DNA of 63,383 nt, filler included, from Reticulomyxa filosa (Eukaryota > Protista > Foraminifera): the NCBI GenBank assembly GCA_000512085.1. It is 11 parts of 11 records of this genome, joined end to end, with 100 filler letters (N's around TTAATTAATTAA, not from the genome) between each part and the next. Parts side by side here need not be neighbours in the genome. Positions count along the whole stretch, not along the records: positions 1 to 10,945 come from ASPP01006773.1; 10 more parts are not named here. The stretch is one strand, 5' to 3'. The translations under genes were made by a program, and so were the position numbers. The stretch's first letter is position 1, and each line of letters begins with the position of its first letter. The notes under the pieces were generated by a model that made no database searches, was not told the DNA's origin, and was given only the letters and a program-made list of their open reading frames with translations. Positions 2,029 to 5,254 of the stretch are shown piece by piece.

Positions 2029-3559
2029 CTATTCCCACAAATTGACAACCGTTCGAATGCTGTTGCGACACACACCAAAACAAGATGTTGACAATTGATA
2101 TTTTTGTGTATTATATAAATATACCTTAGTTTGTCTTTTTGTTTCATCAAGTCAAAAGCGTGATTAATTTTTGACAGTGGCACTACATCGGTCACCATTG
2201 ATTCGATATCAATTTTTCCGTCAATGAATTCTTCCACAAGAGGAGGAACTCCGGTTCGGCCTTTGGTTCCTCCAAAAGCAGAACCACGCCAAACTCTTCC
2301 AGTTACTAACATAAAAGGTTTTGTACGGATCTCTTGTCCACTGGCCGCTACACCAATAATACACGCTTCTCCCCAACCTTTGTGGCAACACTCCAACGAA
2401 GCACGCATTGTTTCCGTCAAACCAATGCACTCAAACGAGAAATCTACTCCTCCATCGGTCATATCAACAATGACATTTTGAATGAGTTTGTCAGGATAAT
2501 CATTTGGATTCACCACATCAGTCGCACCCATTTTTTTGGCTATTTATTGTATTTTTTGTGATTATTTCAATGTCAATGATAAAATAAAGAAATAAATTAT
2601 TTACCAATGTCAAATTTTATCGGGTTATTATCAACACCAATAATTCTCTTCGCTCCGTTTATTTTGCAGCCTTGAATGACAGAAAGTCCAACACCACCTA
2701 ATCCAAAAATGGCCACAGTGGAGCCAGGAGTGACTTTCATTGTGTTTCGTGCTGCCCCAATTCCAGTAGTCACACCACAGCCAAGCAAGCAAACCTCTTT
2801 TTCTAATTTTTTGTCAATGATGGAAGGATTGACTTTTGCCACTGAAATTTCCGGCAGTACACTGTATTGACTGAATGTACTTGTTCCCTGAACAAAATCA
2901 AAATTGGCCATGTTTTTATGAGCAAATTTTGGACTTGTTTTTTTCCCCCTCCCTGTTAGACAAACATCAATACCATAAAGTGAAAGATGTCTTTGCCCTT
3001 GCATTTGTATCGGACACTGTTATCAGGCATCAAACCTTTACCTTGTGTGACACGAATCGCTTGACACAAATTGGTCTTTCCTGATTTGCAAAATTTGCAC
3101 TCAGAACATTCTGGAATGTAAAGTGGGACGACCACATCTCCAGGTTTTACTGAGCGCACATTTTTTCCAACTGATTCCACAATGGAACATCCTTCATGAC
3201 CCAGTATGGATGGAAACACGCCTTCTGGGTCTTTGCCGCTCAACGTATACCAGTCCGTATGGCATACCCCTAGTTTTTTATATGTACTTGTTTTTGTAAG
3301 GATAAGTGTATTGCTTGGTATATTCTTTAACCTGATACTAAATTCTTTATGCGGACTTCGTTATCTTTAGGTGGAGAAACTTCGATTTCTTCAATTTCTA
3401 TCCAACAATCAAAAAGGGTTTTATTTGTGTGTAATGTTTTCAGTGGAGGAGAATGCATATCTCAACTTAAGGGCTCTTTTGTTTTTTCGTCCCATGGTTC
3501 CCATGCAACAGCGGCCTTGCACTTGATCACCTTTCCTTGAGTGCCTTCACTTGCTATGG
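2029..3559 (-). CDS. ADH5: S-(hydroxymethyl)glutathione dehydrogenase / class III alcohol dehydrogenase (FALDH, GSNO reductase), multi-exon; C-terminal half of a predicted fusion protein
   Basis: Spliced translation includes [40 protein letters not shown] (catalytic Zn ligands), [23 protein letters not shown] (structural Zn), GLGGVG (Rossmann fold), ECCHKGWG and [14 protein letters not shown]. Last exon is [10 protein letters not shown] with TAG at 2029-2031. No in-frame ATG precedes the domain. Confidence 0.95.
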
Positions 3560-3788
3560 CTTTATTTTCAAAAACAAAACAAAACTGCAACTTTGTTGAG
3601 CAAATGGAATGCAAATATATCTCACCTTTTGTAAATTGCAAAAGACGTTCAATTTGAACCACGAAGTCGCCGACATGTTTGCGTTTGCAGCCCAAGGCCC
3701 TGTTACAGTGTGAGAAAAGCATCAACAATTGGTTGAAACAAAAGTGTATATTTTTGCAAGGGATGAGAGAGACGAGATAATGACTAAC

Positions 3789-5254
3789 TTGCCGTGATGT
3801 CCAATGTGATCGGCGATAAAAGTAGCAACAAAATCGTAGCCGTGGCCATAGCCTTCTTGCCACCTGCAATTTACGTGGATTCCCTGTGTACGATATTGTA
3901 TTCGCATTGCATTGTTGGTTTCAAAACACGTCAGACAGAAGACAAGAAAACGAATAAGAAGATTGAATAACTGATTGTTGACAAGCCAAAACAAAAGCCT
4001 TGACACGCAATTGATCGTGTTTGTCTTGACCATCGGCCAAAAAACTGTCGGCAGCGCCCTAAAGCAAAAACAAAAGGACGTATCATCAGAAGGGATGGAA
4101 TTGTGCAATAATCCAAAAGAGGAAAGGGATTAGAACACAGCATAGATTAGATGCGAGTACCTGATCAATCAATATTTCAAAATCTTTTCGTCCTGAATAA
4201 TGCAATGCCAATTCAGTGGCGTCGTATTCTTTCCATTTCTCCACGTTGTCTCCCAAAAATCCTTTGAAGGCTTTTTGACCCCATCGAGAGTTGATTGGAT
4301 TACAAACCGGCGAAAAAACGCTGATCGACTGTGCAAGTGTTTCCAATATTTATGTCATATGTTTTCCTTTTTTGCTCCAAACGCAGCGCACCTTTCGTGT
4401 GTTGATGTTATGAAATTTTAACTTTGTATGTTTTGGGGTTTCGAAGAAACACAATCAATGCGCCATGTCCGCCCACGCTGTGTCCGCACACTAAATAACA
4501 AACACGACAACAAAATCGTTTGTTCTTTCACAAGTCGAGAAAAAGACATTTTATCACACCTCCCACATTCTTGGTGTCCAAAGGCAATTGTGCTTGCTTT
4601 GACTCTTTCGTCTCTTCGTCAGTGTAAGTGTACTTTTCAGAAGCAATCAAATGTGGCAACTCCTTGGTGACGTAGTCATACATCACGTAGTGCTTTCGCC
4701 AGGGGTTTTCCGTGGCATTCACGTAAAAACTGGCACCCAAACCGAAATCCCAGTCCTTGTTCTCTCCTTCAATGTTGGCCCCTCGTGGTGAGGTGTCAGG
4801 CACAACCAACGCCAATCCCCATTCACTCGCGTACTGTTCAGTTCAAACTCATCTCACGCTCACTACTCTTCCTGCGCTCAAAGTAGGCAAAGAGCTTAAC
4901 TCGTTGGGCTCCGCTTTTAAAAAAAAAGTTGTCCTCGTTGCATGTCAAGCCAGACAAATAATACAAAATTGGAAATTTGGTCGAATCATCGTGAGGCTAA
5001 TCAACACAACACAATCTTCGGTCAATTAAAACTCAAACGTACAACTTCGTCATTATTAACTGTTGCAGGCAAATACACGTTAAATTTTGCTAACAGGCCA
5101 CCTAAAGCAACACTTTTGTGCTCGAATTTCTATACAGTTTTCACAAGTAAAACGTTGTACAAGCTATCGCTGTAAAAGCACGATTCATAACTTGCACATA
5201 GCCTCCAAAGCATTTTGAAGACTGAATCCTATGGAAATGTGTATCCGAAGACAT
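3789..5254 (-). CDS. ESD: S-formylglutathione hydrolase (esterase D), multi-exon; N-terminal half of a predicted fusion protein
   Basis: ATG at 5254. Spliced translation includes [94 protein letters not shown] and [21 protein letters not shown]. The Ser-Asp-His triad is present. Confidence 0.93.

What the first reader, a model, noticed from the sequence alone, without database searches (positions are those of the whole stretch)
2029..5254. Single gene fusing both enzymes of glutathione-dependent formaldehyde detoxification (SFGH::FALDH)
Seen in sequence: the esterase D coding region ends ...DHIGHHGK. Removing a canonical GTTAG...TAACAG intron (3700-3788) puts it in frame with ALGCKRKHVGDFVVQIERLLQFTK. 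An optional 66-nt stop-free intron (3560-3625) follows, then [21 protein letters not shown], the start of class III ADH. There is no stop in that path and no in-frame ATG for the dehydrogenase. Established knowledge: FALDH converts S-hydroxymethylglutathione to S-formylglutathione, which SFGH hydrolyses to formate and GSH. The two genes are separate in most eukaryotes. As I recall, reciprocal fusions were reported in ciliates (FALDH-SFGH) and diatoms (SFGH-FALDH). Inference: this is a diatom-order bifunctional enzyme in an apparent rhizarian. It could be an independent fusion, an ancestral SAR trait, or a transfer from diatom prey. It may channel the thioester intermediate.
Basis: partly seen in the sequence, partly recalled or inferred. 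Interest (0 to 1): 0.85.

Follow-up and report, generated by a model that had tools for sequence, protein, structure and literature searches.

The report
Fused formaldehyde-detox enzymes in a foraminiferan
A single-celled relative of the foraminiferan Reticulomyxa makes both formaldehyde-detoxifying enzymes as one spliced protein; this fusion was reported from diatoms and ciliates, but we found no report of it in this lineage, where it probably arose separately.

Summary
The fusion is real. The minus strand (5254-2029) holds a 15-exon gene for a stop-free 725-aa protein: S-formylglutathione hydrolase (1-307), a 32-aa linker, then class III alcohol/formaldehyde dehydrogenase (340-725). The catalytic motifs of both halves are present. 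Contigs from a 96-98% alike relative are spliced across both junction introns. Reticulomyxa filosa has the same gene with matching introns, annotated as three genes. A third, unidentified protist carries the junction inside one exon. The rival 'MSATS' start hits a stop with the observed splice and is absent in R. filosa.

Fusion of this pair is known: diatoms in this order, ciliates reversed (PMC3143110). I found no report for Rhizaria. Database proteins show further fusions in dinoflagellates, copepods, a euglenid and an unnamed picoeukaryote. Concatenated trees reject grouping this gene with the other same-order fusions sampled, but single-domain tests do not and no diatom sequence was obtained, so a separate origin is likely (about 0.55), not shown. 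The linker is poorly conserved, which favours a tether over a channel. Verdict: new member of a known kind.

The parts
5192..5254 (-). Exon 1, start ATG at 5254; SFGH aa 1-21
   Evidence: joint 5129/5192
5061..5129 (-). Exon 2, SFGH aa 22-44 (donor GTTAAT at 5060)
   Evidence: joint 4992/5062; same 23 codons in R. filosa
4901..4996 (-). Exon 3, SFGH aa 45-76 ([13 protein letters not shown])
   Evidence: 8-nt loose end matching its 3' end
4560..4833 (-). Exon 4, SFGH aa 77-167, with a lineage-specific insertion before the nucleophile motif
   Evidence: TIGR02821 E 1e-27; human ESD 3fcx best PDB hit; insertion
4423..4490 (-). Exon 5, nucleophile motif GHSVGG (Ser172)
   Evidence: joints 4490/4560 and 4328/4423
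4161..4328 (-). Exon 6, SFGH aa 191-246
   Evidence: TIGR02821 E 3e-14
3972..4058 (-). Exon 7, catalytic Asp250 (DQGAAD)
   Evidence: joints in runs X1 and X2
3789..3883 (-). Exon 8, catalytic His289 (GYGHGY), end of SFGH domain
   Evidence: TIGR02821 E 6e-7
3700..3788 (-). Intron 8 (89 nt), the splice that makes the fusion; holds the unspliced stop TGA 3724-3722 and an overlapping in-frame ATG at 3722
   Evidence: joint 3698/3788, side 73 nt
3626..3699 (-). Exon 9, last SFGH helix and inter-domain linker (aa 307-331)
3560..3625 (-). Intron 9 (66 nt), spliced in both covering contigs
   Evidence: joint 3559/3626, 2 contigs
3467..3559 (-). Exon 10, end of linker and start of FALDH ([12 protein letters not shown] from aa 340)
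3332..3397 (-). Exon 11, FALDH aa 363-384
   Evidence: joints 3397/3467 and 3268/3331
2974..3269 (-). Exon 12, catalytic Zn ligands Cys387 and His409, structural Zn cysteines 439/442/445/453, Arg457
   Evidence: TIGR02818 E 4e-49; motifs
2605..2887 (-). Exon 13, Zn ligand Cys520, NAD-binding GLGGVG and Asp569
   Evidence: TIGR02818 E 4e-35
2125..2539 (-). Exon 14, coenzyme-binding and dimerisation region of FALDH
   Evidence: TIGR02818 E 1e-61; class III ADH best in PDB
2029..2059 (-). Exon 15, C-terminus and stop TAG
   Evidence: same exon in R. filosa; not covered by RNA contigs

Best explanation
One gene, one spliced mRNA, one bifunctional protein of about 80 kDa. SHOWN: gene structure, splicing across the junction in a close relative, catalytic motifs in both halves, conservation in two other protists. 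INFERRED from family knowledge: formaldehyde adds to glutathione; the C-terminal Zn-dependent class III ADH oxidises S-hydroxymethylglutathione with NAD+ to S-formylglutathione; the N-terminal Ser-Asp-His hydrolase releases formate and glutathione; the ADH half probably also reduces S-nitrosoglutathione and forms a homodimer, each subunit carrying a tethered hydrolase. INFERRED here: the 32-38 aa linker is a tether that fixes co-expression, 1:1 stoichiometry and proximity, not a closed channel (about 0.65). The fusion probably arose in an ancestor of this lineage, separately from the other same-order fusions sampled (about 0.55).
For: Joints 3698/3788 and 3559/3626; contig record 5 (840 nt) fits exons 4 to 10 (its two listed pieces match predicted positions). 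R. filosa contig: same order, intron positions matched, linker in frame with no ATG. L002: junction inside one 207-aa ORF that hits both TIGR02821 and TIGR02818. dN 0.18 (SFGH), 0.06 (FALDH), 0.83 (linker) with dS above 2 or saturated. The three genes form a clade for each half (SH-aLRT 97-100) and share an insertion. Concatenated AU tests reject grouping with dinoflagellate-type (p 3e-5), P0320-type (p 5e-5) or all same-order fusions (p 2e-7).
Against: RNA support is from assembled contigs, not reads or long molecules; the run is a relative (96-98% alike) and only guessed to be RNA. No protein or activity data. Single-domain AU tests do not reject one origin of all same-order fusions (FALDH p 0.079; SFGH p 0.61). 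A clade with all other fused proteins except Ploeotia is not rejected (p 0.105). No diatom and no unfused eukaryotic FALDH was in the trees; all trees were quick searches.
Confidence: 0.9

Rival explanations
1. Two adjacent genes with separate transcripts: SFGH ends at the unspliced stop (3724-3722) and FALDH starts at ATG 3676 (MSATS) by a weaker splice.
For: The public R. filosa annotation lists three separate genes. MSATS resembles a FALDH N-terminus.
Against: Intron 8 is spliced in the contigs. ATG 3676 with the observed intron 9 splice stops after 18 codons, and R. filosa has no ATG in the linker exons. In L002 the junction is one exon.
Confidence: 0.03
2. Dual output: the fusion is the main product, but intron 8 retention or a start inside intron 8 also gives free SFGH and a FALDH starting at the in-frame ATG 3722.
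For: An in-frame ATG lies 23 nt before the intron 8 acceptor in both the window and R. filosa; retention stops SFGH just after its domain.
Against: No intron 8 sequence is evident in the contigs (depth of bin 3660-3783 fits exon 9 alone), though contigs drop rare forms. In-frame ATGs at -24 also occur in introns 7 and 12, so a branch-site by-product is likely. L002 has no intron there.
Confidence: 0.12
3. The SFGH-FALDH fusion is ancestral to SAR (kept in this lineage, dinoflagellates and diatoms), later split or rearranged elsewhere.
For: The same order occurs in a rhizarian, in dinoflagellates and in diatoms (PMC3143110). Single-domain AU tests do not reject it; a wider clade of fused proteins is not rejected.
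Against: Concatenated tests reject a clade of same-order fusions. Linkers show no visible similarity between groups. The pair is also fused in copepods and a euglenid, so it fuses readily.
Confidence: 0.2
4. The fused gene was acquired by transfer from diatom prey or plastid donors.
For: Same order as diatoms; foraminifera eat diatoms (own knowledge).
Against: Fourteen introns, saturated dS against R. filosa and a deeper relative (L002) imply an old, resident gene. No close non-foraminiferan hit among 1.8 billion representatives other than L002's fragment. Not directly tested: no diatom sequence.
Confidence: 0.1
5. The two domains dock and channel S-formylglutathione directly.
For: Consecutive reactions; linker length is similar (32-38 aa) in the three genes.
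Against: Linker identity is only 31% and 16%, dN 0.83. The single-sequence model was uninformative (pLDDT 35).
Confidence: 0.15

Closest known systems
Diatom SFGH-FALDH fusion (Stover et al. 2005, as summarised in PMC3143110)
   Same: Same two enzymes, same order.
   Different: Different supergroup branch (Rhizaria). Common descent untested: no diatom sequence obtained.
Tetrahymena FSF1 (EAR92957), FALDH-SFGH (PMC3143110)
   Same: Same two enzymes in one chain.
   Different: Reverse order.
Reticulomyxa filosa contig ASPP01003472.1 (ETO33348.1 and two neighbouring gene calls)
   Same: Orthologue: 72% identical in SFGH, 89% in FALDH, matching introns, in-frame linker.
   Different: Annotated as three genes; one extra intron; one-base poly-A frameshift, probably an assembly error; GHSMGG where the window has GHSVGG.
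Dinoflagellate SFGH-FALDH proteins (Alexandrium, Polarella, Prorocentrum; database entries)
   Same: Same order, similar length (about 685 aa).
   Different: Shorter linker conserved among themselves; concatenated tree rejects grouping with this gene.
Stand-alone esterase D/SFGH (TIGR02821) and class III ADH/GSNOR (TIGR02818); bacterial frmA-frmB gene pairs
   Same: Same domains and catalytic motifs.
   Different: Separate polypeptides. Of 80 bacterial loci 41 had the order F then S, 2 S then F, none fused.

Membership tests
S-formylglutathione hydrolase / esterase D (TIGR02821) | Profile match along the domain | tested here: met
   Exons 4, 6 and 8 each hit only TIGR02821, in order; whole-protein cut-off not testable exon by exon
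S-formylglutathione hydrolase / esterase D (TIGR02821) | Ser-Asp-His triad in GHSxGG, DQGxxD, GYxHxY | tested here: met
   Ser172, Asp250, His289; Val replaces the usual Met after Ser; role assignment from own knowledge
S-formylglutathione hydrolase / esterase D (TIGR02821) | Hydrolyses S-formylglutathione | not testable with these tools
   needs an assay
Class III ADH / FALDH / GSNOR (TIGR02818) | Closer to class III than to other Zn-ADHs | tested here: met
   TIGR02818 top for exons 12-14; class III chains top in PDB, 1e-50 against 1e-39 for class I
Class III ADH / FALDH / GSNOR (TIGR02818) | Catalytic and structural Zn ligands, NAD-binding motif, glutathione-adduct residues (Asp, Glu, Arg) | tested here: met
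   residue roles from own knowledge
Class III ADH / FALDH / GSNOR (TIGR02818) | NAD+-dependent oxidation of S-hydroxymethylglutathione | not testable with these tools
   needs an assay
SFGH-FALDH fusion (diatom-order architecture) | Both domains in one reading frame, SFGH first | tested here: met
SFGH-FALDH fusion (diatom-order architecture) | Common descent with the diatom fusion | not tested
Dinoflagellate-type and P0320-type SFGH-FALDH fusions | Common descent | tested here: inconclusive
   Rejected on concatenated halves; not rejected on single halves
Ciliate FSF1 (FALDH-SFGH) | FALDH first | tested here: not met
   Order is SFGH first

The most novel reading that the evidence does not exclude
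This is a further independent fusion of the formaldehyde pair, in Rhizaria, and one of at least four or five separate fusion lineages across eukaryotes (this lineage, dinoflagellates, an unnamed picoeukaryote, copepods with unlabelled relatives, a euglenid), making the pair an unusually repeatable case of convergent gene fusion, far beyond the two cases published in 2005.
Probability: 0.5. Interest if true: 0.6.

Novelty: new member of a known kind. Interest (0 to 1): 0.42.

Why it matters
It corrects a split annotation in R. filosa and adds Rhizaria to the groups with a one-chain formaldehyde/GSNO detoxification enzyme. With the extra fusions found in databases, it gives natural variants in both orders and with unrelated linkers to test why this pair keeps fusing (co-expression, proximity or channelling). 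It also warns against using this fusion as a rare marker of shared ancestry.

Tried and rejected
Database searches were done exon by exon, by reference; the joined model was never sent to a search or folding tool and was used only in local scripts. Junction-region homologue search with L002 returned only itself. A GYGHGY motif scan of metagenomes gave 18 SFGH loci at 29-46% identity; the four placed in the tree fell among bacteria. Viral contigs: one weak hit. Atlas on the junction: ADH_N only. AlphaFold of the junction without alignment: pLDDT 35, useless. No synteny with L001 or L002 flanks. Recent bacterial transfer rejected: the clade lies outside the sampled bacteria, 14 introns, bacterial order mostly reversed. 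P0282 and P0284-P0287 look like frameshifted operon read-throughs and were not counted as fusions. Careful trees did not finish; quick trees used; long row P0069 left out of the SFGH AU test. The 2005 paper is not held; L002's run is in no held paper. Earlier findings were not open.

Full report
Observation. Translation of the minus strand and a splice model give 15 exons from 5254 to 2029, all introns GT-AG and 62-102 nt, and one stop-free frame of 725 aa. Exons 4, 6 and 8 match S-formylglutathione hydrolase (TIGR02821) and exons 12-14 match class III ADH (TIGR02818). The best solved structures are human esterase D and plant or human class III ADH. The triad Ser172, Asp250, His289 and the ADH zinc, NAD and glutathione-adduct motifs are present (residue roles from own knowledge). 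Database searches were run exon by exon by reference; the joined model was used only in local scripts.

Transcript evidence. Contigs of run X1 (96-98% alike, guessed RNA) skip 12 of the 14 introns, most at exact GT-AG boundaries, including 3698/3788 (SFGH to linker) and 3559/3626 (linker to FALDH, two contigs). Record 5 is 840 nt; its two listed pieces fall where the model predicts, and the intervening joints carry its depth, so it runs from exon 4 into exon 10 (span inferred, since not all pieces were printed). A second contig begins with nine letters that read Gly-Lys-Ala across the exon 8/9 joint with synonymous changes (weak, 5 nt on the exon 8 side). A freshwater metatranscriptome (X2) holds two 151-nt contigs with no differences, one spliced at intron 7. 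Of 40 listed differences in X1, 33 are synonymous. A contig is not a molecule, but any RNA spliced from exon 8 to exon 9 meets no stop before the end of FALDH.

Orthologues. The best hit of exon 4 among 1.84 billion representatives is Reticulomyxa filosa ETO33348.1 (73%). Its contig carries the same gene, annotated as three. Twelve introns were modelled at matching positions, the intron 1 acceptor and intron 2 donor also match, there is one extra intron, and the linker is in frame without an ATG. Synonymous sites are near saturation, so the window is most likely another species of that kin (inference). A third locus, L002, from an unidentified AT-rich protist, has the SFGH end, the linker and the FALDH start in one exon. 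The three share GYGHGY, an insertion before the nucleophile motif and a clade in both halves.

Rivals at the junction. ATG 3676 stops after 18 codons with the observed splice and is not conserved. An in-frame ATG at 3722 inside intron 8 has a counterpart in R. filosa, but introns 7 and 12 have similar ones and no retention is evident in contigs. A minor unfused output cannot be excluded.

Mechanism. From established knowledge: FALDH oxidises S-hydroxymethylglutathione to S-formylglutathione and SFGH hydrolyses it to formate and glutathione; class III ADH is a dimer and also a GSNO reductase. The linker is 32-38 aa, 31% and 16% identical among the three genes, with dN 0.83 against 0.18 and 0.06 for the domains. 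I therefore favour a tether giving co-expression and proximity over a closed channel. This is inference; the structure prediction failed.

What is known. PMC3143110 reports Tetrahymena FSF1 (FALDH-SFGH) and the reverse order in diatoms as independent fusions. Searches of held papers found nothing on foraminifera, dinoflagellates or copepods; most subscription papers are not held. Database searches returned about 160 two-domain proteins: SFGH-first in dinoflagellates and in an unnamed compact-genome eukaryote, FALDH-first in copepods, the euglenid Ploeotia and many unlabelled proteins. No identified diatom protein was among them.

Origin. On concatenated halves the window's clade is rejected as sister to the dinoflagellate type, the P0320 type, or both. 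On single halves a common origin is not rejected, nor is a clade with all other fusions except Ploeotia. The trees are quick searches without diatoms or unfused eukaryotic FALDH, and concatenation assumes shared history. Bacterial neighbours are unfused, mostly in the opposite order, and do not contain the clade. A separate origin is the best reading at about 0.55.

Verdict. Real, transcribed as a fusion in a close relative, and conserved. The architecture is known; the lineage appears unreported. New member of a known kind, interest 0.42.

Noticed in passing
database proteins P0181, P0201, P0230, P0233, P0248: Copepods (Tigriopus, Eurytemora, Neocalanus, Calanus, Caligus) carry a FALDH-SFGH fusion. 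Both halves group with unlabelled FALDH-SFGH proteins, and the SFGH half lies apart from other animal esterase D. Possible gene transfer into copepods; nothing found in held papers. May deserve its own study.
   Followed up: partly
database proteins P0281-P0334, P0327: SFGH-FALDH fusions in many dinoflagellates with a linker conserved among them; a FALDH-SFGH fusion in the euglenid Ploeotia vitrea.
   Followed up: partly
L101 40-3289; L103 1449-4759: Intronless SFGH-FALDH fusion in a compact-genome eukaryote of unknown group, followed in both loci by a PAF-acetylhydrolase-like gene.
   Followed up: partly
L001 135-3681: R. filosa annotation splits the fusion into three genes; one extra A in a poly-A run near 3170 shifts the frame, probably a sequencing error.
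   Followed up: yes
window 4473-4478 region (exon 5): Nucleophile motif reads GHSVGG; both orthologues and nearly all fetched homologues have GHSMGG.
   Followed up: partly
window 3498-3536: A contig in run X1 matches here but carries its own ATG just upstream: a stand-alone class III ADH from another organism or a paralogue in that run.
   Followed up: no
window 6027-6608 (+): Intronless 193-aa ORF, no Pfam hit; Atlas look-alikes are small bacterial PH-domain-like proteins (score 0.90-0.91, TM about 0.5). Lead only.
   Followed up: partly
window 7012-8826 (+): Spliced RAD51/RecA-like gene (weak Rad51 and KaiC hits for the 7687-8202 ORF); upstream extent not modelled.
   Followed up: no
window 4-165, 1118-1222, 10349-10507: AT-rich dispersed repeat, inverted copies about 80% alike over 110-160 nt.
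   Followed up: no
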